A program made the position numbers and the translations under genes. Below are positions 563-43,481 of a stretch of 64,000 nt of DNA, piece by piece. Under the pieces are notes generated by a model. The model saw nothing but the letters and a program-made list of their open reading frames with translations. It made no database searches and had not been told where the DNA came from. How positions within the stretch are numbered: position 1 is the stretch's first letter; each line of letters opens with the position of its first letter. This DNA is from Mustelus asterias. Taxonomy: Eukaryota. Location: the NCBI RefSeq assembly GCF_964213995.1, contig NC_135830.1, positions 7,130,001 to 7,194,000 of the forward strand, in the 5' to 3' direction.

Positions 563-590
563 CGATTTTGTACCATCTGGAATCACTGTG
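563..590 (-). other. 12-bp-spacer recombination signal sequence (12-RSS) 5' of the J segment
   Basis: + strand reads CGATTTTGT (563-571; 7/9 match to GGTTTTTGT), 12-nt spacer ACCATCTGGAAT, then a perfect heptamer CACTGTG (584-590) abutting the J coding sequence. Confidence 0.92.
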
Positions 591-650
591 CAAACTATGC
601 AACCAGAAAGCTTACCTTTGGCAGTGGAACCAAACTCACTGTAGAACCCA
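591..650 (+). CDS. TRDJ: TCR joining (J) segment, probably J-delta
   Basis: Translates NYATRKLTFGSGTKLTVEP (FGxG motif). Followed by a GTAAGT donor at 651 in phase 1, matching the C exon acceptor at 8100. Confidence 0.92.
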
Positions 651-1354
651 GTAAGTGAAACTATTCTCTGCATTTTGTGTCTGGTTATAGTTTACGAAAG
701 TAATGTCCGATTCTCATACACCTGTAAAGAATCTTTATCCTGTAATTGCTGCTGTTGAGTTGATTAGGAGGAGCAGGAGGCGAGAGGGTGGAGTGAAAAA
801 TTAAAACGTCCTCTGACAACTCTGTGTTAGAATTTACAAACAGCAAATTATTAGACTCCTGCAACGATGGAGGAGACCATTAAGCCCATCGCTCTTGCTT
901 TGGGGACAGTAGAATCATCGTCATTGAATTTTACAGAACAGGAAGAGGTCCTGCGGCCCATTGTGCCTGCTCCAGCCATTATAACCATATCTATTCCAGT
1001 CGCATTTTTCAGCACTTGGTTGTAGCCTTGAATGCTACGGCATAAATGATCTTTGGACTTGCATGCCAAGGTCCCTCTGGTCCTCTGCACTTTCTCGCGT
1101 CCTGCAGTTCATGGCGTATTCCCGTGCCTTCAAAATGCATCACCTCACACTTTTCAGGTTTAAATTCCGTTTGGCACTGCTCTACCTGTCTGACCAGCTC
1201 ACCCATATCGTCCTGTAATCTTTGCAAGTCAGTGACACTTAACCTCACACGAAAAACATGTGTGCATCCTTGGCTTGACTTTGTGTGAAATTTGTATACA
1301 GCGCTCTCGAAATAATGCAAATTAAATGTCTTTCTTCTGTCCTCTGTGAGGTAA

Positions 1355-1575
1355 ATATGACTCAGCTGCTGCAATGCGAAGTTTCTGTCTTGGAAATTCT
1401 TCCTGCATATTTATTAATCACAGTGAGACACCCACATTCAGCAGTGAAATATGTGACCAGTAAGGATAAGCTTACTTAATGTCATTATCTGCTGTGTGAT
1501 AGACAGGGAGCCAGCATCATGTGGGAAGGTAATTGAGGACATTGCACTGATATAATGAATTTGCGCAGCTGAATA
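1355..1575. promoter_or_regulatory. Candidate J-C intronic enhancer
   Basis: Unique sequence with TGACTCA (1358-1364), CAGCTG (1363, 1566), GATA sites (1465, 1485, 1497) and TGTGGGAA (1520-1527). Motif inference only. Confidence 0.35.
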
Positions 1576-3829
1576 TCCACCTCAGCTCGTCCTAAATTGC
1601 AGTGTCCAGTCTTTTTTTAGCTCCAGTCCTTAGTAATGTCATATTGGACTAAAAATATCATAATTTTACTTTTACTTCTTGGATGTGGGCATTAAATCAA
1701 ATCAAATCAAATCAAATCCGAATTGCCCTCTGGGCAATTTCAGGTTCCATGACATCGCTTCTTGGATCCAAACCACTGGACGACATATTTCCTTCTCTAA
1801 AGGACATTGTTGATCTAAATGGGCATTTACAACCCATGGCAGAAGTCCTGTTTTCATTCGCAAACTTGGCAATAATAAATTCACTTCCCTCGTCCAAGTC
1901 ATTATGTATATTGTAAATAATTGTGGCCCGAGCATTGATCGCTGAGGCACTCCACTTGTAACAGATTGTCATCCTGAAAATGCTCCTCTTATCCCAACTC
2001 TCTGTATCCTATCGATTGGCGAATCCTCTTTCCATGCGAATATATTACCCCAAAACGCATAAACTCTGAATTAGCCCTCTGGCCGAGATCTTATTCAAAG
2101 CTTTTTTCTGCAAAGATAAGATGCCAACCATTGAACGGCAATGTTTTTTTACGGCAATCGTCGATAGTTGCCGGAGTTTTTACTGGAGGCTACACTTCGA
2201 TCAATTTATTTGAAATTACTCTGAGTGCTGGGGTGGGAATTGAACCCATTCCTTCAGAGAAATTAGCCCGGGGCTCTGCGCTGCTAATCCAATGACATTG
2301 CCATTTCGCTGCAACCATCCCACAATGTTGCATGAAGAATGTTTAGTGATAGTTTCAATCAAAAGTTTGTTACAGAGTCAGATATCACTGTGATTAATTT
2401 CGTCTTGTGAGTTTTATGAAAGAATTAATATTCAGCGCTATCACCCAGCACTTTCCTTCATGGACATATATAATATAGAGAAAGATAGAAAATAGGAGCA
2501 CGAGTGGATCAGTCGACACTTAGACCCTGCTCTGCCATTCGATACGAACGTGGCTGACCCTGTAACTCAACACCATACTAGCCCTCTCCTCATAATTCTT
2601 GACACCTTTAGAGTATAGAAATATATATCATTTTAAAATATATTCACTGATTTCGCATCCACAAACTTCTGTGGTAGAGAATTACAGTTTTACCAGCCTC
2701 TGAGTCAAGACAAAATGTCCTCATCTCAGAATTAAATGTCCAACCCTGAACACTGAAACTTTGCTCCCTTTTTCTGGACCCCACCCCGCCAAAGGAAACA
2801 ACATCCCTGCACCCAGTCTGCTCATCACTGCTAAAATTCTGTATATTTCAATGACATCGCCTCTCATGTTCTAAACTCCAAGTGAATACAGATGCAGTCG
2901 CCTCTCCTGAAACGACAATCCTGCCATCCTAATAATCAGTCTGGTGTACTTTTTCTGCACTCTTTCTATTGCAAGTGTATTTTTTCTTCGAAAGGGGACC
3001 AAAACTGCACACGATATTAGATTTCATCAAAAAAGGATTGGATTTAGGAAATGTCTTAATGGAGGAAAGTGAGGTATTAAGTTGAAAAATGTTTCCTGAT
3101 TTCGCTCCTGAAAGTCTTAAACATTAAACATCGTCAAAAATCCAATTTGCTTGAATCTTGAACTCCCCAACCAGCAGCAAATGTTCCTGTTTATCAACCC
3201 TCTCCGTTTGGGAATGATTAAGTCACTCCTTAACTAAATTCCAGCGTTTTAGAGTTAAACATCATCTACACTGTTAATTGGGTACTCTGAACATACATAC
3301 AGCTTACAGAGTAAAATTTCTTCTCCTCCTGCTCTGTTCAAGGAATTCTTAAATGCTGATTTTTAATTTTATGAAAACCAGAACAAAAATGTTGCCGGTT
3401 CTGATTGCGGACTCTTCTTTATTTCAATCCTGATCTCAGATCTTCACATTCAAACATGAATATTAAGCTCCGAATATATTTTTCGGTCTCTCAGTGTTTA
3501 TGCATTCTATCTTCTTTACGTGTCTAAAGAATTTGAATAAAGACATTCGTTGATCAATGCTTAGTCTGAGCATATGGACAATTATAAACAACATGGTTCA
3601 CTGATTTTTAATTCTAAGGTGCGTTAACTTACATTTCCCTGCACTGAAAACATCCATTAGTTTTATCCATTCACAAAATATTGATATTTCTTTGCAATTT
3701 GATGCTTCCAGCTACGCTGCTTACAATGCTGTTTATTGTGTCATTTGCATATTCAGCATTCTATCACATTTTATCACATTGTCTTAATAAACACGACTAC
3801 ACTGCATATCATTCTGTATAGATATATAT

Positions 3830-4730
3830 GTGCGTGCGTATTTGTGCGTGCGTGTGCGCGTGCGTGTGTGTGTGTGTGTGTTTATGTGTGAGTGTGTTTG
3901 TACGTCTGTATGTCCATACCTGTCTGTGTGAGTGTCTGCGGCGTGTGTATGTATTCAAATCTCGAATCAACATAGAAGCAGGTATAGGCCATTTGGCCCA
4001 TCAATACTGATCGAACATTCAAACCGATCATGGCACATTCACACACGTTCACAGACGTGCACACACGCACCCACCCATAGAAAAGCACACACAGAAACAC
4101 TCACACAGATGCACACAAACACACACACAAGCTACACGCACACTCACATTAATATTTTGTGACACAGAAACGTAGCATTTGCCTTCCTCATTGTTTGCTG
4201 TACCTGAATGCTAGCTTTTAGTGAACAGGTCTCTCTGGAAGTCAACTCTTTTCAACCTTGCACCATGTGGGACATATTCTGTATTTCTGTTTTTTTTTCC
4301 CCCAACCAGAGTGGATAACTTCATACTTAGTTACTTTTTATTCCATCTGCCATGTCTTTGCGCATTCACTCAGCCTGTCCAAATGTCCTTGAAGCCCCCA
4401 TTGCATCCTCCTCTCCATTATGTCTGTGCCATCAGCAAGGTTTTACCTATTTTATTTGGTCCCCACATCAAGTTTCTGGGTGTGTTCCAGTCACTGTGTT
4501 TGTTTCTGGGCATGTCTGTCTCTCAATACCTCCGTCTGATTGTCTCTCGATCTGTGCGTGTGTGTGTTTGTATGTGTGTGTGTGGGTGTGTGTACGCCTG
4601 TGTGCCTGTACGTCCATGCTTGCCTGTGTGTGTCTGCGGCGTGCAAAAGTATTTCAGTCTCAAAAGAACATAAGAGCAGGAGTAGGCCATTTGGCCCAAA
4701 AATAATGCTCCAACTTTCAAACAGATCATG

Positions 4731-4775
<45 letters not shown>

Positions 4776-5200: not shown

Positions 5201-5208
5201 GTGTGTGT

Positions 5209-7897: not shown

Positions 7898-8099
7898 AAG
7901 AGAGGCGTCACTCCTCAGCCTTCTCTGTGCCAAGCGAAAAAGCCCTAATTATCCAGTCTCAGCATTCGGTAAATTCATGGAGAAACTCACATAGGGTTAA
8001 GACATAGAAAAAATGCGGGTCTAATCGAATGGCTCAGCAGGTTGGAGGAGGTCACTCTGTTGGATTCTGATTATTTCCTTTTATTTATTAAATTTTCAG

Positions 8100-8414
8100 A
8101 GGCGAAAGGCCCGGTGGAGCCTACATTGAGCGTCTTTTACCCGCCAGTGCCACGGGGAGCCACCGGCATCGACACAGCTGCAGTTTGCTTGGCCTCGGAC
8201 TTCTCGCCCAACGCAATCATGCTCTCCCTGTACACGGGAGGATCGGGCCAGGAGGTCAATGTGACAAGACCCAGTGTCCTATTGGAGAGCGGGAATTACA
8301 GGAGCTCGGGTTTTCTCTCTTTCCCCCAATCCGAGAAATCGCCAAACATCACGTGCAAGGCATTTCACGATAATCGAAATTACTCAGTAAACATCCCGCC
8401 CACAGCTGAAATTG
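8100..8414 (+). CDS. TRDC: TCR constant exon 1 (C1-set Ig domain), delta-like
   Basis: TTTTCAG acceptor (8098-8099), phase 1. Protein (K)AKGPVEPTLSVFYPP...TAAVCLASDFSPNAI...NVTRPSVLLESGNYRSSGFLSFP...NITCKAFH has both Ig cysteines and N-glycosylation sequons NVT, NIT and NYS. G|GTAAGT donor at 8415. TCR C identity is near certain; delta rather than alpha is my recall-based call. Confidence 0.85.
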
Positions 8415-9204
8415 GTAAGTTTATTTTATTTTCGTTCACGTGATGTGGGTGTCGTTGGCTTGGCCAACATTTATTGCCCATCCTAAATTGCCCTTCAGCA
8501 GAGGACATTTACGAGTCACTTGCCGGCCAGACCATGTAAGGACGGCAGATTTCGTTCGCTGAAGGAAGTTAGTGAACCAGATGAGTTTTAATGATAATCG
8601 ACAATGGTTTCAGGGTCATCATGAAACTTTTAATTCCAATTTTTAAAAAAATGTTCAAATTTCGCAGCTGCCATCCCCAGGTCAGCATTCTGGGTCGTTG
8701 GATTACCAGTCCAGTGACAATGCCACTGCGCCACTGCGTCCTCTGAGAATGTTTTATGACAGGAAGAACTTGCACTAAATATTATCCATCCTCTTAACGA
8801 CCGAAGGACTCTCGGTGTCATCGTCACTCAAAGTGTAGTCTTTTTGAAAGGTTAGCTGACTAATGATTGACTGTCAATTATCCTAGTCTGGGGATTTCAC
8901 TGCAGGAGTTCCTCAGTGTCTCAGGCCTAACCAGCTTCAGTTGCTTCATCAATCACCTTCAATCCATTGTAAGGTCAGAAGTTGGGATGTTCGCTGATGA
9001 CTGAATAATTTTCAGCACCATTCATGACACCTCAGATCTTGAAGTAGTGCATTACAAATGCAGCAATGGCTGGACAATACTTTGACTGACAAGTTGCAAG
9101 TAACATTTGCGCCACACATGTTCCAGGCAATGACCAACTCCAACAGGAAAGAAGCTAACAACCGGCTCTTGACATTTAATGGCATTACCATGACTGAAAC
9201 AATG

Positions 9205-11133: not shown

Positions 11134-11196
11134 GTAAACCTAAATGCCCTACAGGTCGAAATGATCCCTTGACAGAATCAACTGACACGGAAAACG
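11134..11196 (+). CDS. TRDC: TCR constant exon 2 (connecting peptide with interchain Cys)
   Basis: CCCTTCCAG acceptor; 63 bp; (G)KPKCPTGRNDPLTESTDTEN; G|GTATGT donor; phase 1-1. The long hinge exon is more delta-like than alpha-like. Confidence 0.88.
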
Positions 11197-11634: not shown

Positions 11635-11745
11635 ATCGACTGAGGGTGAACTTTCTGTCTTTGACGGTGATGGGGCTAAGAATTTTGTTTTTCAAGAGCA
11701 TTGTCTTCAATGTCATGATGACGGCCAGGGTGTGGCTATTTTGAG
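11635..11745 (+). CDS. TRDC: TCR constant exon 3 (transmembrane and short tail)
   Basis: TTTGGCAG acceptor; (D)RLRVNFLSLTVMGLRILFFKSIVFNVMMTARVWLF* with the Arg/Lys pair diagnostic of TCR alpha/delta TM segments. TGA at 11742-11744, then GTAAG donor at 11746, implying an unlocated non-coding 4th exon. Confidence 0.92.
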
Positions 11746-13594
11746 GTAAGGTCGGTCACCTGAATGCATGCCAAGAAAGACAAACTGTGATGAACAATGA
11801 CCATTGACGGGATCTCGCGAGGCCACTGTTAAGGCAGACGCTGAAACTAACCCGTGGAGTGAGCATTAACTTGGATGCATTTAGACAAACGAACTCTTAC
11901 TCCAGTGCCCCATCCTCATCGCTTTTCATCCCTCCCTTGCCACCGCACCACCGCCCCCCCCCCGCCCCCGCCGCCCCCCCCCCGCCCCCGCCCCCGCCGC
12001 CCCCCCCCCCGCCCCCGCCCGCCAACCCCCGTTCCCAATCGCAGCCTTGACTTCTTAAACCTCTCCAGATTTTTGTTTAATTATGGGTGTCACTGACTAG
12101 CCTAACCTTTTCCGCCCATCCCTTGGTCTTGAGCTGCGTGGCTCTTTCGGAGAGTCGGTGCAGACTCTATGGGCCAAATCGCATCCTTCTGCACTGTCGG
12201 GGTTCTTGTGCAATTGCAGTGGCTTCTGAGAATATTATTGGAGAATGTTAATGGAGACCCTAAAGATACAAGGTGTTCTTTGCTTGCTGACTCTTTGATG
12301 TGCTACTACTGTTGCTCCTTCCATTCCAAACAGAACTGCATTGGACGATGAAATGCATTCAGGTGTGAACTCATTGACTGGGGTATCAAAATCCAGAGGC
12401 TTCCTGATCAGAAGTTCCGCTTCAAGCAATTCAATCTCGCTTGTTTTAAATGGCGACTTAACTTTAAAAGATCCTCTTTTCGGTCACTTTTTTCCACTGT
12501 TATTTTGATTTGAAATTCGTGGTTCTGCGAAAATTCTACTGCTTATGCTACATAAACATTTCAATTATGCATTTCAGCAACAGCGTGGAGCTAGCATTGA
12601 CATGGTGTCTGCCTGCATTAGTGTCGGAGACATTTTTGAAAACAGCATTTTCAATTTTAGGACGTATAGAACTTCGATTTTTATATTCTTTGCTTAGAAT
12701 AGTAGAATCCTATTCCGGAGAAAGCAGCCACTCAGCCCATAGTGACAATGGCAGCCCTTTACAGGGCAATCTAGGTAATGGCACCTCACATGTTCCTTTT
12801 GGTTGTTTTACTCTGGTAGTTATTTTAAACATTGTATTTTAATGCATGCAATTTAAGAGCGTAAGATACGTTAAATCAGCAAGGGTCTGATCGGATTTTC
12901 ATCAAACTTTTAGATTGTTGCCAAGGTGATATTCTCTCTCCCGTACTTAATCTTGGACTCCAGATTTTCCTCCCAGTGCCACGGAGGCACCAATCCCCAG
13001 CCTGTGCATCTGGGCCCTTAGAGATAATCGAGCCACCACTTGCCGCCGTGCAGAGCTTTATCATGACACGGCATTTCACAAGTAAGATGAACAAGAGTTT
13101 TTGAACATCTCGCCATGAGCTTAGCCTAAAATCAGGTTATTGCTCTCAAGTTATTTTACAGATGGGACATTCGTACACATTTAAGACCATCCGGTTAGTC
13201 AGGGGAAGCGAGAGTTATGGGGCTAAGGTGGTAAAGTGGAGTTGAGGATAATATCAAACCAACCATGATTTCATTGAAAGGCGAAGCAGCTCCTGTGGGC
13301 CGAATGGTCTACTTCTACTCCTCCGTCTTATGCTCTTCTGGTTCGTTAATCACACCTTTGTGCATATCTGTCACCTTGTTATTTTTTCATATGCATCGCT
13401 TATAATATTGAATAAATTTGCAGTCTTTAATGAAGGGTGTCTTCTGCTTCTTTGTTAACGCGATGGCAAGACATGCATTTGGTTTGGTTGACAGAGAGCT
13501 CTTGTAGTCGCGCAGCACAAATGGAGGCCACTGAGCCCATCATGAGGATACCAGCTCCCCATGGCAGATCCCGCCAATTGGAGCCAATTTATTT

Positions 13595-16500
13595 TTTAAA
13601 GTCTCTCATAGCAGGAAGGGCTTGGCTCTTAGTGAGCAATTAATGGAGGGGTCACCTGTGGTTGTCCCCCTCCAAAACAAGTATATTGCTTTGGATAGTG
13701 TGGAGGAGGATGACTCTCCAGGGGTAAGCCACAGTGACCAGGTCACTGGCACAGAATCAGGTTCTGTGGCCCGGAAAGGAAAGAGAGGAATTCGGAGAGC
13801 AATAGTGGTGGGGGATGCGTCGGTTCGAGGCACGGATAGGCGATTCTGTGGGTGCGAACGGGACTCCAGGATGGTAGTCTGCCTACCTGGTGTTGGGGTA
13901 CTGGATGTCTCCGAGCGGATAGGAGGCATATTAAAAGGGGAAGATAAAGAAACGGATGTCGTTGTACACATTGGTGCAAATGACGTAGATAGGAAGAGCA
14001 GGGGGATCGTACGAGAGCAATTCAGGGAGTTGGGAAATAGGCGAAAAGGTAGGGCCTCCAGGGTAGCAATAGCTGGGCTGCTCCCAATGTCTCGTGCCAG
14101 TGAGGCTAGGAATAGGGAGTTAATACAATTGAACGCTTGGCTAAAGGACTGGTCCAGGAGGGAGGGCTTCATTTTCCTGGATCATTGGGAAGTTTTCAAG
14201 AGAGGATGGCACCTGTACAAGAAGGATGGGTCACAACTAAATTGGAAGGGCACGAATATCCTGGCTGGGAGTTTTGCTCGTGCAGTTCGGGTGGGTTTAA
14301 ACTAATATGGCAGGGGGGTGGGGATCAAAAAATTAGGTCTACAAGTGTAGAGGCTGGGGACGAGCTTGGGGCCAGGACAAGGCTGGCAAAGAAGAAGAGC
14401 ACTCTGGGGGAGGATGAACTCACTGGGCCTGGAGGTCTGGAGTGCCTCTACTTCAAAGCAAGGAGCGTAGCAGGTAAGACAGACGAACTTAGGGCCTTAA
14501 TGCTTACGAAGAATTTGGATGTAGTTGCGGTGACAGAGACTTGGTTGAAAGAGAGACAGGACTGGCAGCTGAATATTCCGGGGTACAAGTGTTTTAGGCG
14601 AGACAGAGGAGGGGCCAAAAGAGGTGGGGGAGTAGCAGTATTCGTTAGAGAACATATTACAGCGGTGCAGAGGGAGGACAATTCAGAGGGGTCGTGTAAC
14701 GAGTCACTGTGGGTGGAGCTCAGAAACAGGAAGGGCGCAGTCACTATGTTGGGGATATACTACAGGCCCTCCAACAGCCCAAGGGAAGTGGAAGAACGGA
14801 TATGTCAGGAGATACTGGATAGGTGCAGGAAAAAATAGGGTTGTTGCAGTGGGAGACTTCAATTTCCCTGGTATAGAATGGAAATCGCTTAGAGCTGGGA
14901 CTCTCAATGGGGAGGAATTTGTAAAATGCGTACAGGAAGGTTCTTTGGAACAATATGTAGATAGCCCGACTAGAGAGGGGGCTATACTGGACCTAGTACT
15001 GGGGAATGAGCCCGGTCAGGTCTTCAAAGTTTCAGTAGGAGAACATGTGGCAAATAGTGACCACAATTCTGTTAGCTTTAGGATAGCGATGGAAAAGGAT
15101 GAGTGGTGTCCCAAGGGTAAGGTGTTGAATTGGGGGAAGGCTAACTTTAGTGGGATTAGGCAGAAATTGGCAGTTGTTGATTGGGAGAGACTGTTTGAGG
15201 GTAAATCCACAACTGGCATGTGGGAGTCTTTTAAGGAACAGTTGTTAGGGCTGCAGGACAGGCATGTGCCTGTAAAAAAGAAGGATAGGAAGGGTAGGAT
15301 TCGAGAACCGTGGATAAACAGGGAAATTGAGGGACTGGTCAAAAAGAAAAGGGAGGCGTACGTTAGGTCCAGGCAGTTAAAAACGGAGGGAGCTCTGGAG
15401 GAATACAAAGAAAGTCGGAAAGAACTCAAAAGAGGAATTAGAAGGGCAAAAAGGGGTCACGAAATGTTCTTGGCAGACAGGATTAAGGAGAATCCCAAGG
15501 CATTTTATTCATACGTTAGGAACAAAAGGGGTGTCAGGGAAAAAATCAGACCTCTCAGGGACAAAAGTGGGGAATTATGCTCAGAGCCCAAAGAAGTAGG
15601 GGAGATCCTAAATGAATACTTTGCGTTGGTATTCACAAAGGAGAGGGATGTGTTGACTGGGAGTGTCTCGGAGGGGAGTGTTGAACCATTAGAGAAAATC
15701 TCCACTACAAGGGAGGAAGTGTTAGGTTTTTTAGAGAATATAAAGACTGACAAGTCCCCAGGGCCTGATGGAATCTATCCAAGGCTGCTCAGGGAGACGA
15801 GAGATAAAATCGCTGGGCCTCTGACGCAAATCTTTATCTCATCACTGGACACAGGTGAGGTCCCAGAGGATTGGAGGATAGCTAATGTGGTCCCGTTATT
15901 TAAGAAGGGTAGGAAGGATAACCCGGGTAATTATAGGCCGGTGAGCTTGACGTCCATGGTAGGGAAGTTGTTGGAGAGAATTCTTAGAGATAGGATGTAT
16001 GCACATTTAGAAAGGAATAAACTCATTAACGATAGTCAGCATGGTTTTGTGAGAAGGAGGTCATGCCTCACTAACCTGGTGGAGTTTTTTGAAGAAGTGA
16101 CTAGAATGGTTGACGAGGGAAGGGCCGTGGATGTCGTCTCTATGGACTTTAGTAAAGCGTTTGACAAAGTCCCTCACGGTAGGCTGGTGCAAAAGGTTGG
16201 ATCTCATGGGATAAAGGGGGAGGTGGCTAGATGGGTGGAGAACTGGCTTGTCACAGAAGACAGAGGGTGGGAGTGGAAGGGTCTTTTACCGGCTGGAGGC
16301 CTGTGACGAGTGGTGTTCCGCAGGGCTCTGTATTGGGACCTCTGCTGTTTGTGATTTACATAAACGATCTGGAAGAAGATGTAACTGGGGTGATCAGTAA
16401 GTTTGCGGACGACACGAAATTGGCTGGAATTGGCGATAGTGAGGAACATTGTCAGAGACTACAGATGGATATAGATCGGCTGGAAATTTGGGCAAAGAAA

Positions 16501-17309
16501 TGGCAGATGGAGTTCAAACCAGATCAATGCGAAGTGATGCATTTTGGTAGAGCTAATGTAGGGGGGAGCAATGCGATAAATGGCAGAATCATAAAGGGTG
16601 TAGATACGCAGAGGGACCTGGGTGTGCAATTCCACAGATCCTTGAAGGTGACGTCACAGGTGGAGAAGGTGGTGAAAAAGGCATATGGCATGCTAGCCTT
16701 TATAGGACGGGGTATAGAGTATAAAGGTTGGGATCTGATGTTGCAGATGCATAGAACGTTGGTTCGGCCGCATTTGGAATACTGCATCCAGTTCTGGTCG
16801 CCACACTACCAGAAGGACTTGGAGGCTTTAGAGAGAGTGCAGAGGAGGTTTACCAGGATGTTGCCTGGTTTGGAGGGGCTTAGTTATGAGGAGAGATTGA
16901 GTAAACTGGGGTTGTTTTCACTGGAAAGACGGAGGATGAGGGGAGACCTAATAGAGGTGTATAAAATTATGAAAGACATAGATAGGGTGAACGGTGGGAA
17001 GCTTTTTCCCAGGCTGGTGGTGACGTTCACGAGGGGTCATAGGTTCAAGGTGAGAGGCGGGGGGGAGGTTTAACATGGATATCAGAAGGACATATTTTAC
17101 ACAGAGGGTGGTGGGGGCCTGGAATGCGCTGCCAGGCAAGGTGGTGGAGGTGGGCACACTGGGAACGTTTAAGACTTATCTCGATAGCCACATGAACGGA
17201 GTGGGTATGGAGGGATACAAAAGAATGGTCTAGTTTGGACCAGGGAGCGGCGGGGGCTTGGAGGGCCGAAGGGCCTCTTCCTGTACCGTATTGTTCTTTG
17301 TTCTTTGTT
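13595..17309 (+). mobile_element. Near-complete CR1 LINE (ORF1 SGNH/esterase part plus frameshifted ORF2 endonuclease-RT)
   Basis: IVVGDASVRG...VVVHIGANDV (ORF1); VAVTETWL, GGGVAVF, GDFNFPGIEW, SDHN, GVPQGSVLGP, FADD (ORF2). Frameshifts near 14835, 16250 and 17065; (TTCTTTG)n tail. Confidence 0.95.
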
Positions 17310-23221: not shown

Positions 23222-23579
23222 CTGCCCATTGCACAGCGGGAACAGGCGGATGCCACGATTCTCTCTGTCTTTCCTCTGGATGACCAGAGGTGCAGAAAAT
23301 AATACAACTCAAACATTAGGCTGCAAACGGCAAGAACCAAAAGTACAACTGCAGAGTCCAAAAGCAGAAAGAAAGGCACATTCTGGGCTGTTTCGACGGT
23401 TTCAGGGCATAGAAATTAATCTGTTCTTATGTGTGCTGTAGATTTGAACCTAACGGCTCAGCGCTGAAAGAGTAAATCGAAAAGTGAGCATGCGATGAGC
23501 AGGAGCTACTGTAAGTGCTTCAGTGCAAGGGAGCCCCATCAGTAAGCCTTGCAGTCATGGAGTATAGTGAGGAATCTCA

Positions 23580-28590: not shown

Positions 28591-29361
28591 ATAAAGTGTT
28601 GATGTCAATTTCAGTTTACTCAACCTGCTGGGTAACGGAAGCAAACTTAAAACCGGTGTGTGGGTTTTATTGTGTGATGAGATAATGTATAAATGTATCA
28701 CCATAGCCCAGGGTGGGGTTGTAGTTGATCATTTATCTGCTGTCTGTACTCCTGAACAAATGTCAAATTGGAGAGGTTATCAAGTTTGTATTATAATGTA
28801 ATGATGTGAAATATGTGGGAGAAGAATTGGTGTGATAAAGGGTGGAAAACAAACTGGGGAATGAGACTGAAGCTGCTGTGCAGACTGAATAGTTCTTGTT
28901 GTGTGAATGGAGGGACACATGTAGGGACGGATGGAGGGAGGAAGGGATGGACGGATCGAGGGACCGATCGAGGGAGGGAGCAATGGATGGAGGGATGGAT
29001 GGGGGTGACCTGGGGGAAGTCATTGGGCAGAGACTGTGCTTGCTGCTGTTTCCCCTCCTGGCGCCAGGGGTCACTGGGACACTCCCTGCAGCTCCTGCTG
29101 CTGCTCCTCACAATGTCACATCTTGGCCGTACCCTGGACCAGCTGCAGCTCTTTGGCGGAACATCAGGAGCCAGTGGTGGGGAAGGACTGGCCGTCCTAC
29201 TCCAGTGACGTCACCACCAGCCCCGACACCCGCCGTTTATTTTAAGAAAAAAAACGACTATTCAGAAATGGAGAAAGTGACTGAAATTCTGAACCAGACT
29301 GGCCACCGGGAGGTGATTTATATGTAAATAAAAATACAATTATTAATTTAATATGAAAGAT

Positions 29362-30360
29362 GCCGCGACCAAAGCCATCCTAGACCTTAGGACGGTCGTG
29401 CTCGGCCCCGAAACTGCACGCAAACTTGAGACGGCGCAGGCGTGCGGTGGGATCCCGCCCGAGCGTTCCCCTGTTCGGGCGGAATTCCACATTGGCCCAA
29501 AGCCTCAGCCCCCTCCCCTGGGTGAGGTGCCCCACAGCCTGAGCCGCCTCGCGGAAATGCCCTCCGTGCCTTTTTCTACCGCGCGGAGGCGTTTCCTGTG
29601 CGGGCTGCTGCTGCACACCCTCCACTACCGCCTCCTCGCCTGTCGCCCGGATACACCTTGGCGGGCCTTGTTGCTGCCGGGCGGCGGAGGTCCCCGCTGG
29701 AGCTCCCTCTACGGAGGGATCTCCCCCAATTACGTCGGGGACCTGGGGTGGAGGGTGATGCATGCAGCAGTTCCGCACAACCGTAGGATTCACTGGTTCA
29801 CGGGCTCCGAAGACTGCCCTTTCTGCGGCCTTGTGGAGTCCGTGGACCATGTCTATGTTGAGTGTCTTAGGCTGCACTCCCTTTATGTTTTCCTGAAGAA
29901 CCTTTTATTGATGTTCTGTTTGCACTTCAGTCCCACGCTCCTGATCTACGGACACCCGGTGCGGAGAGGGGAGGGTCGGGATGGCGACCTCCTCGTGAAC
30001 CTGCTCCTGGGCCTGGCGAAACGCGCCATTTACCGGTCCAGGCAGCGGGTGATCGAGGGGGCCGTCCATCCTGACTGTCTTCCCCTCTACCGCGGCTACG
30101 TTCGCGGCCAGGTGTCCCTGGAGAGGGAGCATGCGGTGTCCACGGGCGAGGTTGACGCTTTCCGCGCCCGCTGGGCACCGCAGGGGTTGGGGTGCATTAT
30201 TGACCCTAATAATCACATTTTAATTTGATGTTTTTAAGTTTCCTTTGTATTTTGATTTTTGTTCGGGCTGTTCCCCCTCCTTTTTGGGGAGCTGCCCCTT
30301 TTACTTTGTCCCGATTTAATCTGAGTTTGTTTACTTGGTTTGGTTTGACCTAAAAAGAGG
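29362..30360 (+). mobile_element. Tx1/L1-clade non-LTR retrotransposon 3' end, copy 1 of 3
   Basis: ORF2 C-terminus with DLGWRVMH and CPFCGLVESVDHVYVEC (CCHC knuckle), T-rich 3' UTR, ends AAAAAGAGG. Confidence 0.88.
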
Positions 30361-31254
30361 TCCCCTGTTCGGGCGGAATTCCACATTGGCCCAAAACCTC
30401 AACCCCCCTCCCTGGGTGAGGTGCCCCACAGCCTGAGCCGCCTCGCGGAAATGCCCTCCGTGCCTTTTTCTACCGCGCGGAGGCGTTTCCTGTGCGGGCT
30501 GCTGCTGCACACCCTCCACTACCGCCTCCTCGCCTGTCGCCCGGATACACCTTGGCGGGCCTTGTTGCCGCCGGGTGGCGGAGGTCCCCGCTGGAGGTCC
30601 CTCTACGGAGGGATCTCCCCCAATTACGTCGGGGACCTGGGGTGGAGGGTGATGCATGCAGCAGTTCCGCACAACCGTAGGATTCACTGGTTCACGGGCT
30701 CCGAAGACTGCCCTTTCTGCGGCCTTGTGGAGTCCGTGGACCATGTCTATGTTGAGTGTCTTAGGCTGCACTCCCTTTATGTTTTCCTGAAGAACCTTTT
30801 ATTGATGTTCTGTTTGCACTTCAGTCCCACGCTCCTGATCTACGGACACCCGGTGCGGAGAGGGGAGGGTCGGGATGGCGACCTCCTCGTGAACCTGCTC
30901 CTGGGCCTGGCGAAACGCGCCATTTACCGGTCCAGGCAGCGGGTGATCGAGGGGGCCGTCCATCCTGACTGTCTTCCCCTCTACCGCGGCTACGTTCGCG
31001 GCCAGGTGTCCCTGGAGAGGGAGCATGCGGTGTCCACGGGCGAGGTTGACGCTTTCCGCGCCCGCTGGGCACCGCAGGGGTTGGGGTGCATTATTGACCC
31101 TAATAATCACATTTTAATTTGATGTTTTTAAGTTTCCTTTGTATTTTGATTTTTGTTCGGGCTGTTCCCCCTCCTTTTTGGGGAGCTGCCCCTTTTACTT
31201 TGTCCCGATTTAATCTGAGTTTGTTTACTTGGTTTGGTTTGACCTAAAAAGAGG
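30361..31254 (+). mobile_element. Tx1/L1-clade 3' end, copy 2 of 3
   Basis: Near-identical to 29467-30360. Confidence 0.88.
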
Positions 31255-32142
31255 TCGGGCGGAATTCCACATTGGCCCAAAGCCTCAGCCCCCCTCCCTG
31301 GGTGAGGTGCCCCACAGCCTGAGCCGCCTCGCGGAAATGCCCTCCGTGCCTTTTTCTACCGCGCGGAGGCGTTTCCTGTGCGGGCTGCTGCTGCACACCT
31401 TCCACTACTGCCTCCTCGCCTGTCGCCCGGATACACCTTGGCGGGCCTTGTTGCCGCCGGGCGGCGGAGGTCCCCGCTGGAGGTCCCTCTACGGAGGGAT
31501 CTCCCCCAATTACGTCGGGGACCTGGGGTGGAGGGTGATGCATGCAGCAGTTCCGCACAACCGTAGGGTTCACTGGTTCACGGGCTCCGAAGACTGCCCT
31601 TTCTGCGGCCTTGTGGAGTCCGTGGACCATGTCTATGTTGAGTGTCTTAGGCTGCACTCCCTTTATGTTTTCCTGAAGAACCTTTTATTGATGTTCTGTC
31701 TGCACTTCAGTCCCACGCTCCTGATCTACGGACACCCGGTGCGGAGAGGGGAGGGTCGGGATGGCGACCTCCTCGTGAACCTGCTCCTGGGCCTGGCGAA
31801 ACGCGCCATTTACCGGTCCAGGCAGCGGGCGATCGAGGGGGCCGTCCATCCTGACTGTCTTCCCCTCTACCGCGGCTACGTTCGCGGCCAGGTGTCCCTG
31901 GAGAGGGAGCATGCGGTGTCCACGGGCGAGGTTGACGCTTTCCGCGCCCGCTGGGCACGGCAGGGGTTGGGTGCATTATTGACCCCAATAATCACATTTT
32001 AATTTGATGTTTTTAAGTTTCCTTTGTACTTTGATTTCTGTTCGGGCTGTTCCCCCTCCTTTTTGGGGAGCTGCCCCTTTTACTTTGTCCTGATTTAATC
32101 TGAGTTTGTTTATTTGGTTTGGTTTGACCTAAAAAAAAGAGG
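31255..32142 (+). mobile_element. Tx1/L1-clade 3' end, copy 3 of 3
   Basis: Near-identical; frameshift near the C-terminus; A8 tail. Confidence 0.88.
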
Positions 32143-33163: not shown

Positions 33164-33772
33164 TGCTTTTGTCCGGGATCCGCTCTATCTCTGCAGCAGA
33201 AACACAAGGCGGTATCGGAGAGAAGCGTCCTGGTGACATTTGAGGAACAGTGTTCCTTTGTACAAAGTAGGCAATATTTTTCCACATCCTCCGGGCTATA
33301 AATCCTCATTAAATATCTCGGAGTTTCGCTGGGATACAGGAACAGAGTAGGGAGAGTAGCTGTCGAGTATTTACAATCCAGCATTATGCTCTGTGCTTGG
33401 AGAACGCTTAATTCAGATTGATCATTGGACACAGAATCATCACTATTTCTGCAACAAAACACAGAATGTATCAAATATCTGCGAGTGAAAATAACACTTG
33501 GAACAAATATTCCCCATTTTTTAGTTCGTATATGTCTGTTTTGCTGCAGCTGTTTCTCTGATTGTATCTTCCTCTAAATCTATTCCTCATTCATTCATTT
33601 ATATCACCGGTTCTTGCTCTGCTTAACTCCAGGTCTCGACTCCAATTCCAATTATTCAATCCCTCTTGTTTTCTTCCCATATCTCCACCTACATTTCTCC
33701 CTTGTCTCTCCCTTACAGGTTTCAATAACAGATATCCCGCATAATGGACCATCAGCTGGTGCTCAGGTCCAT
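33164..33772 (-). pseudogene. TRAV/TRDV-type V pseudogene, inverted relative to J-C
   Basis: Acceptor TGTTGCAG at 33449-33450; DSVSNDQSELSVLQAQSIMLDCKYS...TLF[WYI missing]LYPSETPRYL...LSDTALCFC. Nonamer ACAAAAGCA (33164-33172) is retained but the heptamer is gone. Decayed leader at 33717-33772 contains stops. Confidence 0.85.
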
Positions 33773-34378: not shown

Positions 34379-34845
34379 TGACGTCATTCCCCTTTAATAT
34401 TCTGGATCGAGAGAATGCCGAAACCAGGAAACGGCAATTAGTGGAATTGCAGCTTCCCGTTTTGATTTTAAGTGAGCAATTTTTGAAGGAGAGTGTTGAC
34501 CATAAAAAACAACTTTCTTTTGCATGGACAATTATCGGTGGAGTGTCTGCGATCTCTCAATCACAGCAGATATTAACACAAAAGAGACAATCGATTGAAA
34601 TCCAATGAAATACAATCACCTGATGCCCTGAGAGCATCCGCTCGTTCAGCCTGCAACAGAACCGTGGCCTGAAATTTGTCATTTCATCTGTTAGCAGAAA
34701 CACCACAGACTCTTCAAACTCTTCATTCACTCAACAAGACGTTTGACCAGTCCTAATGGAGACAGCACATCGGTATCAGGCGCTGGGGTGTGTTACTGTG
34801 TCAGTGAGTCACTGAGACACAAAACCCGCACGTCGCAGATAAACT
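34379..34845 (+). pseudogene. V pseudogene, same orientation as J-C
   Basis: CRE TGACGTCA at 34379-34386. AISQSQQILTQKRQSIEIQ*(Cys to TGA)...ESIRSF(Trp to Ser)SLQQNRGLKFVIS, then frameshifted VSGAGVCYCVSE. Degenerate RSS CACTGAG (34810-34816), 20 nt, AGATAAACT. Confidence 0.7.
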
Positions 34846-34864
34846 ATCCAGTTATATCCCGAGG

Positions 34865-35165
34865 TGATGAGAAGCTTTTTTTATTGGTCGTGGTTCATCC
34901 TGAGCAACTCCGTGACGAAGGACTCTGTGCTCTACGGGCTGTTCCCAGGGACAAACCGAGACAAGCACCAATTGCTGTTGGAGAATTTTCAACTGGGTAA
35001 AATACACCATTTGCCTTCCCGAAACCAGTTGATCTTCATGTGCAAAGAATTGTCCTCGATCGAGTGTTGCAGACAACACATTCCAGGCCACAGGGCTACC
35101 GATTGAGGGACGCACTAAACCTTGGGGCAGTTGCTGCAAAGGCGCAATCGGGAAAACTGCGACCT
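34865..35165 (+). mobile_element. Decayed Tx1/L1-like ORF2 C-terminal fragment (different family from the triplet)
   Basis: SVTKDSVLYGLFPGT...KELSSIECCR...LRDALNLGAVAAKAQ. Confidence 0.6.
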
Positions 35166-38936: not shown

Positions 38937-38982
38937 ATGCGGCTCCCCGTTTTCACTCTGATCTGGGTGACATTCATTGTTG
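38937..38982 (+). CDS. V leader exon with non-canonical donor
   Basis: MRLPVFTLIWVTFIV(G), 46 nt, phase 1. Followed by ATGAGT instead of GTGAGT. Confidence 0.8.
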
Positions 38983-39673: not shown

Positions 39674-39977
39674 ATCTGAGCGATGGAGATTCTGTTCCTC
39701 AGCGGGAATCCTCACTCACACGGACAGAGGGAGAAGATGTCACTTTAAACTGCACCTTTACCGACGATGCTTATTATTTATTTTGGTATCGTCAATACCC
39801 AGGAAAACAGCCTGAGTTTGCAGTCCGGAGAGACAAGAAGGGCGGTTTTGAATTAAAGGCGGATTTCGCTCGGACTCGGTTTTCTGATTCAGTCCAGCAG
39901 TCAGACAATTTGTACCGAGTGACTATTTCGGAGCTGCGGCTGTCTGACACCGCGGTCTATTACTGTGCACAGAGTCT
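39674..39977 (+). CDS. TRAV/TRDV-type V exon with fully open frame (missed by the ORF track)
   Basis: GTTTCAG acceptor; (D)LSDGDSVPQRESSLTRTEGEDVTLNCTFTDDAYYLFWYRQYPGKQPEFAVRRDKKGGFELKADFARTRFSDSVQQSDNLYRVTISELRLSDTAVYYCAQS. Both Cys, WYRQ and DTAVYYC are intact. Confidence 0.95.
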
Positions 39978-40016
39978 CACAGTGATGAGAACGAGTGAAA
40001 TCCTCGTACAAAAACT
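39978..40016 (+). other. 23-RSS, near consensus
   Basis: CACAGTG, 23 nt, ACAAAAACT. Confidence 0.96.
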
Positions 40017-41380: not shown

Positions 41381-41857
41381 GGTTTTTGTACGGACTAACT
41401 GCGTCTCTGTAACTGCGGTTCAGCGCACACTGTTACAGATACACGGCAGAGACAGAGACACGGACCCCGGTGATATTTAATGGAGCTGTTTTCTTGTCTC
41501 TGTCCAAATTAGCAGAAAACTGGTCCGAAAAATCAGGAGACTTATCCCCCTTCCCCTTGCCGTAACTTTTCAATAAATATCTCGGAGCTTCTCCGGGATA
41601 CAGGATGTACCAGAATAGAGTTTGGTCAGCGTATTTACCTTTATAACTGCAGTTCAAAATTACCGTCTGTCCTTCCTGAACCGTTAATTCAGGCGGCTCC
41701 TGGGAAACTGAAGTTTGGCCATTGGTTCCTGTAACAACATATAGACTGTGTGAGAAATCTGTGAGTGAATATAACCCATTGAACACACACTGAGGATTTG
41801 AGCTCAGACTCACGGGGCAGCATGTCCATTATTATCAGTAGAACACGCAGGGAACAT
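41381..41857 (-). pseudogene. TRAV/TRDV-type V pseudogene, inverted
   Basis: Leader 41857-41814 is 44 nt (+1 frameshift). V exon from 41728: TNGQTSVSQEPPELTVQEGQTVILNCSYKG...LFWYILYPGEAPRYLL...SAVYL*QCALN. Perfect nonamer ACAAAAACC (41381-41389), damaged heptamer (CGCAGTT). Confidence 0.93.
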
Positions 41858-42011
41858 GTGGTTCCTGAATGGACAGTAAACAGCGACACTGTTTAAAATA
41901 TGTTGTTGCTTCTAGTCTTATATCACGGAGTAAACTCAGATCAGAGGCAGCTTCAATCATTGGCAAATTGGGGGGTTTTCCCAGTGTTGCAATTTGCTGG
42001 TCCCCTTGAGA

Positions 42012-42023
42012 TGACGTCAGCTG
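42012..42023 (-). promoter_or_regulatory. CRE plus overlapping E-box in V promoter
   Basis: TGACGTCAGCTG about 155 bp upstream of the leader ATG at 41857. Confidence 0.65.
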
Positions 42024-42754
42024 TGGACCAAACACTGTTAGTGGAGGACTAAACACAGCTGGCTCCCTCCAAACACATTCCATCCCGGGCTGTGTGTGTT
42101 TTTCTCACTCTCTTTCTCTTTCCATGAAAGGTGAATAACGTTATCAGTTACACTGTCTCTTTCTCGGTTCACCCTCTTTCGATCGAACTCAATGTCCCCC
42201 TTTTTATAGATAAATCTTTCTTTATAAATAAAGTTAAAAGTGAAATAAATAATTTACACTCATTTACTCTGCGGGTATTAATGAGTGCATCCACTGCATA
42301 AACATAATAGTAGTTACTGCTTTATTTATACCGGGGATAAGTAATCACCCAAGTCCACATTGACTTGCGTTTCCACTGGGATTACTCTTATACTGGGAAA
42401 GTACTGATTCAATCAGTCATTATTTCTGTCCAGAAACTTCAAAATGTGACAACTCTCAGTGTGCCTTTGATATTAGATCACATTTAACAGGTGTTCCCTG
42501 ACAGATAAACATCTGACACAGAAAGATTAAAAATACTGATTTATTAAGTTATTCACCCGAGACATCTGTGTTTTGTGATTGGATTTATCCAGGAGTAATC
42601 TGAGCGCCAAATGTCACATTTTCCCAACTGTGACAATCACTGACGTTAGGGAGGGAAAGCCACTCAGATGAGGCTGCATTGTCACGTTCATTTTCTCTGA
42701 AATTCAACGCAATGTGTTTTGCGGACAAGGAACCATTGATTGTGGACCTGCGCC

Positions 42755-43276
42755 AGTTTTTGTACGAGGTCCGCGGGAGCCTCATTTACTGTGGGTCTGA
42801 GTGCACAGTAATACACGGTGTTGTCTAACATCTTCAAATCTTTCATGGACAAGTGAAAAGTGTTTTATGTCTGGCTGAGATTCCTGCTGAAATGTTTAAA
42901 GCCGGGAGCCGTATCGGTAAATCCATAGCCATCGCTCTGAGCAGATACTGAGGAGCTCGGTGTGGATAGTGGCGATACCAGAACAGGACATAGACTGTAG
43001 CTGAACTCGATACAGAGTAACTGCAGGGTATTGCTGAATCTTCACCCTCTGCTGCTTCAACTCCTGGTTCTGACTGGGATACTGAGTCACCGTTACTCAT
43101 CTCTGAAAATAGACAACAGACACGCAGCGGGTTAGAAGGAGTAACAACAACGGAATAATCGCCTAGAAATGGAAATGGGCAATGAATATGGTGGTTGGCG
43201 GATTTCAGTCAAAGGTTCAAAATGACCGACCTGTGATCAGGACAATAACCAGGGACAGACAGAGCTTCACCCCCAT
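42755..43276 (-). pseudogene. TRAV/TRDV-type V pseudogene, inverted, with usable-looking 23-RSS
   Basis: Intact leader MGVKLCLSLVIVLIT(G) at 43276-43231 with GT donor. V exon from 43102: DSVSQSEPGVEAAEGEDSAIPCSYS...LFWYRHYPHRAPQYLLR, frameshift, a TAA stop, then FHLSMKDLKMLDNTVYYCALR. RSS CACAGTA (42793-42787), 23 nt, ACAAAAACT. Confidence 0.93.
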
Positions 43277-43467
43277 GGTTCCAGTCTGAACACCAGAAAC
43301 AGAGGCAGTGATCACTGTCTGCATAACACCTGGAACTGTAAAAGTTGAAACAGTCAGTGGACTGTTATGAGGTCGAATGTAACTCCGTCTCTCCGCCCAT
43401 TTTTACATCTTCAAACAGTCGCTTCCTCCAGAAGGGAATCGTGATTTTTTTTATAAGTGATCAGAGA

Positions 43468-43481
43468 GCGCCCTCCCGTGG
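43468..43481 (-). promoter_or_regulatory. CTCF-like motif in V promoter region
   Basis: Reverse complement CCACGGGAGGGCGC, about 190 bp upstream of the leader ATG. Confidence 0.6.

What the first reader, a model, noticed from the sequence alone, without database searches (positions are those of the whole stretch)
563..43481. TCR-delta-type J-C unit followed by a mixed-orientation V array and no J-alpha/C-alpha
Seen: an intact J and C with matching splice phases, then 5-6 V segments 21-32 kb downstream of C in both orientations, then non-immune genes (tRNA, RPS13 copy, EMC4, ZNF). I found no FGxG J segment with a 12-RSS after C, and no DAD1. Known: in the usual TRA/TRD layout C-delta is followed by J-alpha and C-alpha, in mammals with a single inverted V-delta in between. 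Inference: this is either a stand-alone second TCR-delta locus (separate delta-derived loci exist, such as the avian second TRD and TCR-mu) or a rearranged TRA/TRD locus with J-alpha/C-alpha at the other end.
Basis: partly seen in the sequence, partly recalled or inferred. Interest (0 to 1): 0.85.

Follow-up and report, generated by a model that had tools for sequence, protein, structure and literature searches.

The report
Shark TCR-delta gene, no alpha unit
This stretch of starry smooth-hound shark DNA holds an intact T-cell-receptor delta J-C gene that is followed by four mostly broken V segments and ordinary genes rather than by the alpha-chain unit seen in other vertebrates, and it is one of many such delta copies in this shark.

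Summary
The observation largely holds. The window comes from Mustelus asterias. It carries one J segment (12-RSS, FGSG, phase-1 donor) and one intact constant gene with three coding exons plus a 3'UTR exon. NCBI's own gene model joins those exons as I predicted.

By association the C is delta-type. It is 83% identical to the C of a two-V-domain (NAR-TCR-like) chain, and it matches ray and skate proteins named "T cell receptor delta constant". No hit is named as an alpha constant.

No second J, C-domain exon or alpha/delta-type transmembrane exon lies in the 52 kb after C.

There are four V elements, not 5-6:
- One faces the same way as J-C. Its V exon and 23-RSS are intact, but its leader lacks an in-phase GT donor.
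- Three are inverted, and all three are pseudogenes or relics.

tRNA-Val, an intronless RPS13 copy, EMC4 and a zinc-finger gene follow.

The species' annotation holds at least 11 delta-C gene models on 10 contigs, two of them on this contig. This is therefore one cassette of a multi-copy delta family, not "a second locus".

I could not determine where J-alpha/C-alpha lie. Expression of this exact copy was not shown, because the RNA contigs matched close paralogues. This scan had already noted similar delta units on other pieces of this genome.

The parts
563..590 (+). 12-RSS of the J segment (nonamer 563-571, spacer 572-583, heptamer 584-590)
   Evidence: RSS scan: heptamer 7/7, nonamer 7/9, spacer 12. 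Sequence read.
591..650 (+). J coding segment (FGSG motif). It ends in phase 1, with donor GT at 651-652.
   Evidence: It is the only J-like hit in the window on either strand.
8100..8414 (+). C exon 1, an Ig C1-set domain
   Evidence: Pfam C1-set E 1.5e-4, profile positions 4-84 of 86. 100% identical to P0001 over the 65 residues that model covers. 83% identical to P0003.
11134..11196 (+). C exon 2, the connecting peptide with one Cys
   Evidence: Sequence read. P0001 has the same residues. Joint 11195/6 to 11634/5 with GT..AG ends in runs X5 and X6.
11635..11745 (+). C exon 3: transmembrane segment with Arg and Lys four residues apart, short tail, stop codon at 11742-11744
   Evidence: PDB search: mouse TCR alpha 30.6 bits, human TCR delta 30.2 bits. 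It is the only such exon in the window.
12334..12600 (+). Start of exon 4 (3'UTR). Its end lies beyond 12600 and was not determined.
   Evidence: Joint 11743(+2) to 12332(+2) with GT..AG ends in X5, X6 and X1.
33190..33447 (-). V relic (V4), heavily decayed
   Evidence: tblastn with V2, E 1.7e-10. V profile E 6.5e-6. No Pfam hit.
38937..38979 (+). Leader exon of V1 (14 codons plus G). The expected donor position 38980-38981 reads TT.
   Evidence: Sequence read. The leader scan finds no in-phase GT after a hydrophobic leader.
39674..39977 (+). V1 V exon: open, with both Cys and the YYC motif. It has the same orientation as J-C.
   Evidence: Pfam V-set E 7e-15. 63% identical to the V of skate delta chain P0042.
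39978..40016 (+). 23-RSS of V1 (heptamer 7/7, nonamer 8/9)
41381..41728 (-). V2 pseudogene, inverted relative to J-C. V exon 41728-41418 with an in-frame TAA at 41435-41433. The RSS remnant has no CAC in its heptamer; the nonamer is at 41389-41381.
   Evidence: Sequence read. Pfam V-set E 1.2e-12. Not reported by the RSS scan. Only a 5-codon leader before a GT.
42755..43276 (-). V3 pseudogene, inverted. Good leader 43276-43231. V exon 43102-42794 with a frameshift in FR3 and a TAA at 42867-42865. The 23-RSS at 42793-42755 is preserved.
   Evidence: (V1 matches two different frames).
44720..44794 (-). tRNA-Val (CAC); flanking, not part of the receptor gene
   Evidence: ARAGORN.
46097..46552 (+). 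Intronless full-length RPS13 copy (processed retrocopy); flanking
   Evidence: Pfam Ribosomal_S13_N E 3.7e-31 and Ribosomal_S15 E 4.9e-13, both in one ORF.
47990..51892 (+). EMC4, a multi-exon gene. Its last coding exon lies at about 51749-51892. The earlier exons were recognised by eye only.
   Evidence: Pfam EMC4 E 9.5e-15 on ORF 51575-51919. ORFs 47819-48049 and 48219-48434 gave no Pfam hit.
58186..59160 (-). C2H2 zinc-finger gene exon; flanking
   Evidence: Pfam zf-C2H2 E 2.4e-68, 11 stretches.

Best explanation
The window holds the 3' end of one self-contained TCR-delta cassette of Mustelus asterias. Its last J and an apparently functional delta constant gene are followed by the edge of the cassette.

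That edge consists of three inverted V segments, one same-orientation V, and then housekeeping and zinc-finger genes.
- The inverted Vs sit where the mammalian inverted V-delta sits and could only have joined by inversion. All three are now dead.
- The same-orientation V cannot serve this J-C on the chromosome. If it joins anything, it would join a J-C further to the right.

The cassette is one of many delta cassettes in this species, several of which have their own NAR-type V, supporting V, J and C. No alpha J-C unit follows it.

Shown: the gene anatomy, delta-type kinship, absence of a second J or C in the window, the state of the Vs, and the many copies in the annotation.

Inferred: that the cassette works on its own, that the copies are separate loci rather than assembly duplicates, and what lies upstream (earlier notes only).
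For: - Anatomy and phases. NCBI model P0001 joins the same exons.
- Exon junctions are used in spliced contigs of close paralogues.
- Delta kinship: 40 proteins at E<=1e-3. I asked names for 20 of them. Two are "T cell receptor delta constant" (skate, stingray), and none is named an alpha constant. The best hit, P0003, and also P0009 and P0032 carry two V domains before this C type. P0004 carries an antibody-VH-like V before it.
- Flajnik et al. [quoted passage not shown]
- One C only: C1-set matches 1 of 202 ORFs and V-set matches 3 of 202. The transmembrane exon profile hits 1 of 2,070 pieces; the next best is E 2.4.
- V states.
- Copies: 14 hits at E<=1e-10 among 133 candidates. Eight are M. 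asterias proteins on 8 contigs. With the query P0043 plus P0001 and P0002, that makes 11 models on 10 contigs.
- P0055 lies on the same 20.43-Mb contig and is 93% identical in exon 1.
- In the tree, the Mustelus copies do not form one tight set: nine rows (eight models plus the window's exon 1) form one clade, P0003/P0059 form a second starred clade, and P0060 stands apart.
Against: - No alpha-constant sequence could be brought into the tree, so "delta, not alpha" rests on association and on names given by NCBI's pipeline.
- The transmembrane exon matches mouse alpha and human delta equally well.
- PDB hits to exon 1 are antibody C domains, not TCR chains.
- Every RNA contig that covers position 8325 shows the paralogue's base, and the J spliced onto exon 1 in run X6 is not this window's J. 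Expression of this exact copy is therefore unshown.
- Some of the 11 models may be uncollapsed haplotypes. P0054 is 99% identical to P0043, and P0057 and P0058 are identical in exon 1.
The cassette may therefore still belong to one very large alpha/delta complex.
Confidence: 0.6

Rival explanations
1. The window is a small part of one giant alpha/delta translocon. In this reading delta D-J-C sits at one end and alpha/delta V segments are spread over megabases among IgM clusters and zinc-finger genes. J-alpha and C-alpha lie far to the right on the same strand. V1 would be the first V of that shared pool and would join J-alpha by deletion.
For: - V1 faces the right way for a J-C to its right and keeps a perfect 23-RSS.
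- Earlier notes, unverified, place an IgM cluster with an alpha/delta V array 122.6 kb beyond the window's end and an "alpha-type V-J array" 3.80 Mb beyond it on the same piece.
- Flajnik et al. 2025 report alpha/delta-type V exons between IgH clusters and call the TCR alpha/delta arrangement a translocon (PMC12227049, section 6 read).
Against: - Nothing beyond the window could be read.
- V1's leader lacks a usable in-phase donor.
- EMC4, a tRNA gene and zinc-finger genes lie between this V and anything further right.
- At least 10 other delta-C gene models exist, which one translocon with one delta C does not explain.
Confidence: 0.25
2. The layout is an assembly artefact. The antigen-receptor region is highly repetitive and many near-identical delta cassettes exist, so the join between C and the downstream V relics and housekeeping genes could be a misjoin. 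The many copies could be uncollapsed duplicates.
For: - Many delta-C models sit on small contigs of 34 kb to 1.8 Mb.
- Some pairs are 99-100% identical in C.
- The 21 kb between C and the first V relic is dense in LINE and simple-repeat sequence.
Against: - C identities among copies go down to 81-83%, too low for alleles.
- DNA-like contigs of run X4 match the window without any difference over 7900-8115 and 8515-8728.
- The window contains no N.
Confidence: 0.08
3. The C is really an alpha constant, giving a teleost-like C-alpha followed by inverted Vs.
For: - NCBI's automatic name for several relatives is "T cell receptor alpha chain MC.7.G5-like".
- The transmembrane exon scores as well against mouse alpha as against human delta.
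Against: - The same C type follows two-V-domain NAR-type chains and a VH-like V, both of which are delta traits (PMC12227049 passages).
- Skate and stingray relatives are named delta constant.
- Exon 1 is a full canonical C1-set domain.
- Only one J lies in the 7.5 kb before C.
Confidence: 0.03

Closest known systems
Mammalian TRA/TRD locus (delta nested in alpha, with one inverted V-delta just after C-delta)
   Same: V segments in inverted orientation lie downstream of C-delta. V carries a 23-RSS and J a 12-RSS. The C has three coding exons plus a UTR exon.
   Different: No J-alpha array or C-alpha follows within 52 kb, and housekeeping genes follow instead. The inverted Vs are all dead. The mammalian layout is cited from general knowledge, not from a call.
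Teleost TRA/TRD locus (TRDD-TRDJ-TRDC-TRAJ-TRAC, then V genes downstream in opposite orientation; PMC8559430, passages read)
   Same: D-J-C-delta comes first and V segments lie downstream, mostly in opposite orientation. Atlantic salmon also has same-orientation V genes downstream, an unexplained feature like V1 here.
   Different: There is no TRAJ-TRAC between C-delta and the Vs. Only four Vs are present, none clearly functional. According to earlier notes, V segments also lie upstream.
Second TCR-delta locus of galliform birds and the TCR-mu clusters of marsupials and monotremes (PMC3457774, passages read)
   Same: A V-D-J-C-delta-type cluster exists apart from an alpha J-C unit. It uses antibody-like or extra V domains. 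TCR-mu likewise occurs as duplicated clusters.
   Different: Those loci are unlinked to TRA/TRD, and linkage here is unknown. The number of copies here (11 models) is much higher than the two delta loci of birds.
Newt TRA and TRD on separate chromosomes (PMC12698447, abstract and passages read)
   Same: The delta J-C is not followed by an alpha J-C.
   Different: In newts the separation is shown at chromosome level. Here only 52 kb downstream was examined.
Elasmobranch antigen-receptor complex (Flajnik et al. 2025, PMC12227049, section 6 and passages read)
   Same: TCR alpha/delta genes, NARTCR, VH-like V segments and IgH clusters are linked, with alpha/delta-type V exons scattered among them. 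This matches the window and the earlier notes on this genome.
   Different: The text I could read gives no order of C-delta, J-alpha and C-alpha and no count of delta constants. Fig. 1 and table S1 could not be seen and may already show this layout.

Membership tests
TCR delta constant gene (TRDC) | Ig C1-set domain exon with the two conserved Cys | tested here: met
   Pfam C1-set E 1.5e-4, above the curated cut-off (22.5 vs 21 bits), covering profile positions 4-84 of 86.
TCR delta constant gene (TRDC) | Connecting-peptide exon with an interchain Cys, then a transmembrane exon with Arg and Lys four residues apart (alpha/delta type) | tested here: met
   Sequence read. The transmembrane exon hits only TCR alpha and delta chains in the PDB: 22 of 22 hits at E<=10, best 30.6 and 30.2 bits.
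TCR delta constant gene (TRDC) | Groups with delta rather than alpha constants | tested here: inconclusive
   Relatives include two proteins named delta constant and chains with NAR-type or VH-like V domains. None of the 20 hits whose names I looked up is named an alpha constant. No alpha constant sequence was available for the tree.
TCR delta constant gene (TRDC) | Fed by D segments (V-D-J joining) | not testable with these tools
   The window starts 562 nt before the J. D segments would lie further upstream.
Nested TRA/TRD locus (tetrapod type) | C-delta followed by a J-alpha array and C-alpha | tested here: not met
   No further J on either strand, no second C1-set exon and no second transmembrane exon within 52 kb.
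Nested TRA/TRD locus (tetrapod type) | [quoted passage not shown] | tested here: inconclusive
   No DAD family hit among 202 ORFs of 80 aa or more. DAD1 exons are shorter than that, so they could have been missed.
Teleost-type TRA/TRD locus | V genes downstream of the C genes in opposite orientation, joined by inversion | tested here: inconclusive
   3 of 4 V elements are inverted, but all 3 are pseudogenes or relics. TRAJ-TRAC is absent.
Stand-alone or multi-copy delta cluster (bird TRD2 / TCR-mu-like) | Own V, (D), J and C in one compact unit, in more than one copy | tested here: inconclusive
   11 delta-C models on 10 contigs, 5 of them with two V domains plus J plus C. For this copy the upstream V and D segments are known only from earlier notes. 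Haplotype duplicates are not excluded.
Stand-alone or multi-copy delta cluster (bird TRD2 / TCR-mu-like) | Unlinked to, or clearly apart from, the alpha J-C unit | not testable with these tools
The position of the alpha constant gene in this genome is unknown to me.

The most novel reading that the evidence does not exclude
In this houndshark the TCR-delta chain is no longer encoded by a single gene nested in the alpha locus. Instead it is encoded by about ten self-contained cassettes (NAR-type V, supporting V, VH-like V, D, J, own C-delta), arranged like shark antibody miniclusters. These cassettes are scattered through the Ig/TCR complex and uncoupled from J-alpha/C-alpha.
Probability: 0.35. 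Interest if true: 0.7.

Novelty: new variant of a known kind. Interest (0 to 1): 0.5.

Why it matters
In nearly every jawed vertebrate studied, delta is nested in or directly abuts the alpha unit. That layout ties the alpha-beta versus gamma-delta lineage choice to deletion of delta.

A shark in which an intact delta J-C is followed by housekeeping genes, and in which delta C exists in many copies, would show that this coupling is not universal at the base of jawed vertebrates. It would also link TCR-delta to the minicluster style of shark antibody genes.

It gives a concrete place to test this: copy-specific transcripts, inversional joints, and the position of the alpha constant gene.

The published elasmobranch maps I could not see (Fig. 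1 and table S1 of PMC12227049) may already show part of this.

Tried and rejected
- PDB search with exon 1. The best 60 hits were all antibody C domains, so it did not separate alpha from delta.
- ESM Atlas. It returned only generic C1-set clusters.
- A search with the V region of skate chain P0042, meant to fish out shark alpha chains and thereby an alpha constant. It examined 24 candidates and none passed, so no alpha constant entered the tree.
- Possible fifth V at 34755-34950. It was seen as weak tblastn pieces but got no profile hit, so I rejected it.
- Three further RSS-like hits at 4471-4498, 24292-24318 and 41724-41750. They lie in repeats or inside V2 and have no coding segment beside them, so I took them as chance.
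- Ten ORFs at 46.9-48.5, 57.4 and 62.9-63.3 kb, scanned for EMC4 and other genes. Only a zinc finger was found. EMC4 was then found at 51.6-51.9 kb.
- Papers by Deiss 2019, Ott 2021 and Criscitiello 2006 are not held. What I say of them comes from other papers' text or from recall.
- Paper searches found no description of the order of C-delta and J-alpha/C-alpha, or of the number of delta constants, in any shark. Supplements were closed.
- The Pfam family for alpha constants is recalled, not checked.


Full report
WHAT THE WINDOW IS

The window has no N and is rich in LINE and simple-repeat sequence. The translation of C exon 1 is 100% identical, over the part covered, to NCBI protein XP_078056376.1 of Mustelus asterias. 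That protein is encoded on a contig of 20,430,395 bp. The window is therefore starry smooth-hound DNA.

THE J-C UNIT

The J segment reads as follows:
- nonamer 563-571, a 12-nt spacer, heptamer 584-590;
- coding 591-650, ending in phase 1;
- donor GT at 651-652.

It is the only J-like element on either strand. The strict pattern gives 1 hit. Of 5 loose FG.G hits, only this one has both an upstream heptamer-like site and a downstream donor.

The C gene has exon 1 at 8100-8414, exon 2 at 11134-11196 and exon 3 at 11635-11745, with the stop codon at 11742-11744. All junctions are phase 1 with AG/GT sites.
- Exon 1 is a C1-set domain (Pfam E 1.5e-4).
- Exon 2 carries the single Cys of a connecting peptide.
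- Exon 3 is a transmembrane segment with Arg and Lys four residues apart.

I searched each exon on its own and never joined them. NCBI's model P0001 joins them exactly at these ends.

Contigs of runs X5 and X6 are spliced and show these joints:
- 8415>11135;
- 11195>11634 (GT..AG, cut +1);
- 11743>12332 (GT..AG, cut +2; also seen in X1).

The last two are my predicted junctions, and the third defines a fourth exon (3'UTR) starting at 12334. The first joint is 1 nt off my prediction. The likely reason is that the contig's first exon-2 base differs from the window's.

These contigs come from paralogues, not from this copy:
- they lack 3 nt at 8237;
- they read T at 8270 (in X6, two of the contigs that cover it);
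- every contig that covers 8325 reads G, which gives the residues of P0002, P0057 and P0058;
- the 30 letters spliced onto exon 1 in X6 encode a different J.

The gene family is therefore transcribed and spliced this way. Transcription of this exact copy is not shown.

ALPHA OR DELTA

A search of 1.84 billion representative proteins with exon 1 gave 40 hits at E<=1e-3, 11 at E<=1e-10 and 1 at E<=1e-30. I asked names for 20 of the 40.
- Two are "T cell receptor delta constant" (Leucoraja erinacea, Hypanus sabinus).
- Three are "T cell receptor alpha chain MC.7.G5-like", an automatic name.
- One is "Ig heavy chain Mem5-like".
- The rest are uncharacterised or, among the weak hits, Ig light chains.
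- None is named an alpha constant.

Read directly, the best hit P0003 (83% identity) and also P0009 and P0032 carry two V domains before this C type. P0004 carries an antibody-VH-like V before it. Flajnik et al. [quoted passage not shown]

That is association, not a tree with alpha constants. My attempt to fetch shark alpha chains found nothing. The transmembrane exon does not discriminate: mouse alpha scores 30.6 bits, human delta 30.2 and human alpha 23.5. Exon 1 hits antibody C domains in the PDB. I put delta at about 0.9.

WHAT FOLLOWS C

I scanned with Pfam all 202 stop-free ORFs of 80 aa or more. ORFs starting at 57.3-59.2 kb were left out because they are zinc fingers.
- C1-set matched 1 ORF, the known exon 1.
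- V-set matched 3 ORFs.

A profile of the transmembrane exon, built from only 3 proteins because my cutting pattern was strict, hit 1 of 2,070 six-frame pieces (E 1e-23). The next best was E 2.4. tblastn with exon 3 gave the same picture. The 52 kb after C therefore contain no second C gene and no J array.

THE V ELEMENTS

Four places are supported.
- V1 (+ strand). The V exon at 39674-39977 is open, and a perfect-heptamer 23-RSS lies at 39978-40016. V1 is 63% identical to the V of a skate delta chain. Its leader (ATG at 38937) has TT where the phase-1 donor should be, and no other in-phase GT follows a hydrophobic leader. It may therefore be an ORF-type gene or a pseudogene.
- V2 (- strand, 41728-41418). 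It has an in-frame TAA two codons before the second Cys, a heptamer without CAC, and only five leader codons before a GT.
- V3 (- strand, 43102-42794). It has a good leader and a preserved 23-RSS, but also a frameshift and a TAA in FR3.
- V4 (- strand, 33447-33190). It is a relic (V profile E 6.5e-6, no Pfam hit).

V1 and V2 were in the V profile, so their own scores are circular. V3 and V4 were not in it.

GEOMETRY

This part is inference from the established rules of V(D)J joining.
- A V lying downstream of J-C in inverted orientation can join by inversion. The three dead Vs are of this kind.
- A V lying downstream in the same orientation would put the coding joint, together with J-C, on an excised circle. 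V1 therefore cannot serve this J-C on the chromosome.

FLANKS

Downstream of the Vs lie tRNA-Val at 44720-44794, an intronless full-length RPS13 copy, EMC4 (last coding exon matched at E 9.5e-15) and a C2H2 zinc-finger exon.

MANY COPIES

A search with the C part of P0043 gave 14 proteins at E<=1e-10 among 133 candidates. Eight of them are from M. asterias, on 8 contigs. Adding the query P0043, P0001 and P0002 gives 11 models on 10 contigs.
- P0055 lies on the same 20.43-Mb contig as the window and differs at 7 of 104 exon-1 positions.
- Five of the 11 models carry two V domains, a J and a C.
- In a tree of 24 rows, the window's exon 1 sits with P0001. Its nearest relatives are P0057 and P0058 (97% identity).
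- In that tree, nine Mustelus rows (eight models plus the window's exon 1) form one clade, P0003/P0059 form a second starred clade at 81-82% identity to the window's exon 1, and P0060 (83%) stands apart.
- The tree has no alpha outgroup, and several branches are long.
- Some pairs are 99-100% identical and may be haplotype duplicates.

Other species gave one or two hits each. The database collapses sequences at 90% identity, so that comparison is rough.

CONTEXT FROM EARLIER NOTES (UNVERIFIED)

- A NAR-TCR cassette, a supporting V-delta and VH-like V genes lie 27-39 kb before the window.
- An IgM cluster with an alpha/delta V array lies 122.6 kb beyond the window's end, and an "alpha-type V-J array" lies 3.80 Mb beyond it.
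- Delta-C units were also noted on other pieces of this genome.

LITERATURE

[quoted passage not shown] Salmon also has 29 unexplained same-orientation V genes downstream (PMC8559430, passages).
- Galliform birds have a second delta locus, and TCR-mu occurs in duplicated clusters (PMC3457774, passages).
- Flajnik et al. 2025 map TCR alpha and delta within the elasmobranch Ig/TCR complex. Their Fig. 1 and table S1, which I could not see, may bear on both the order and the copy number.
- Five paper searches found no text giving the order of C-delta and J-alpha/C-alpha, or the number of delta constants, in a shark.

VERDICT

The best reading is one delta cassette of a multi-copy family, ending in dead inverted Vs and ordinary genes, with no alpha unit beside it. 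It is a new variant of a known kind, of moderate interest. It depends on checks of the whole assembly that I could not run.

Noticed in passing
window 8100-8414, with runs X5 and X6: The abundant spliced delta-C contigs in two runs come from paralogous copies: a 3-nt gap at 8237 and G at 8325. In X6 a different J (..GNGTRLIVEP) is spliced onto exon 1. The window's own variant at 8325 was seen in none of the four runs laid.
   Followed up: partly
window 38937-38981: The best-preserved V has a plausible signal-peptide exon, but the expected phase-1 donor reads TT instead of GT. Its leader intron would be about 690 nt, against about 130 nt in V3.
   Followed up: partly
window 29347-31999: Three tandem units of about 0.9 kb in a GC-rich block (GC 0.59). 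Each has a near-identical ORF with a weak zf-RVT match (E 0.002-0.003). They look like repeated LINE tails.
   Followed up: no
window 13535-17070: A LINE on the + strand. Its first ORF is esterase/OSK-like (GDSL-like E 6.5e-6), and it is followed by an endonuclease plus reverse-transcriptase ORF (RVT_1 E 4.6e-17). It lies directly after the C gene.
   Followed up: no
window 46097-46552: A complete, intronless 151-codon RPS13 reading frame with no internal stop codon. It is a processed retrocopy that could still be coding.
   Followed up: no
window 23500-28600: About 5 kb of CA/TG-rich low-complexity sequence with strong strand skew, between the LINEs and the tandem block.
   Followed up: no
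proteins P0055 and P0001 (same 20.43-Mb contig): A second delta-C gene model, with two V domains, lies on the same contig as the window. It differs from the window's exon 1 at 7 of 104 positions.
   Followed up: partly
window 62800-63400: A GC-rich stretch with long open frames on both strands and no Pfam hit. It is possibly a CpG-island promoter of a gene that runs off the window.
   Followed up: no
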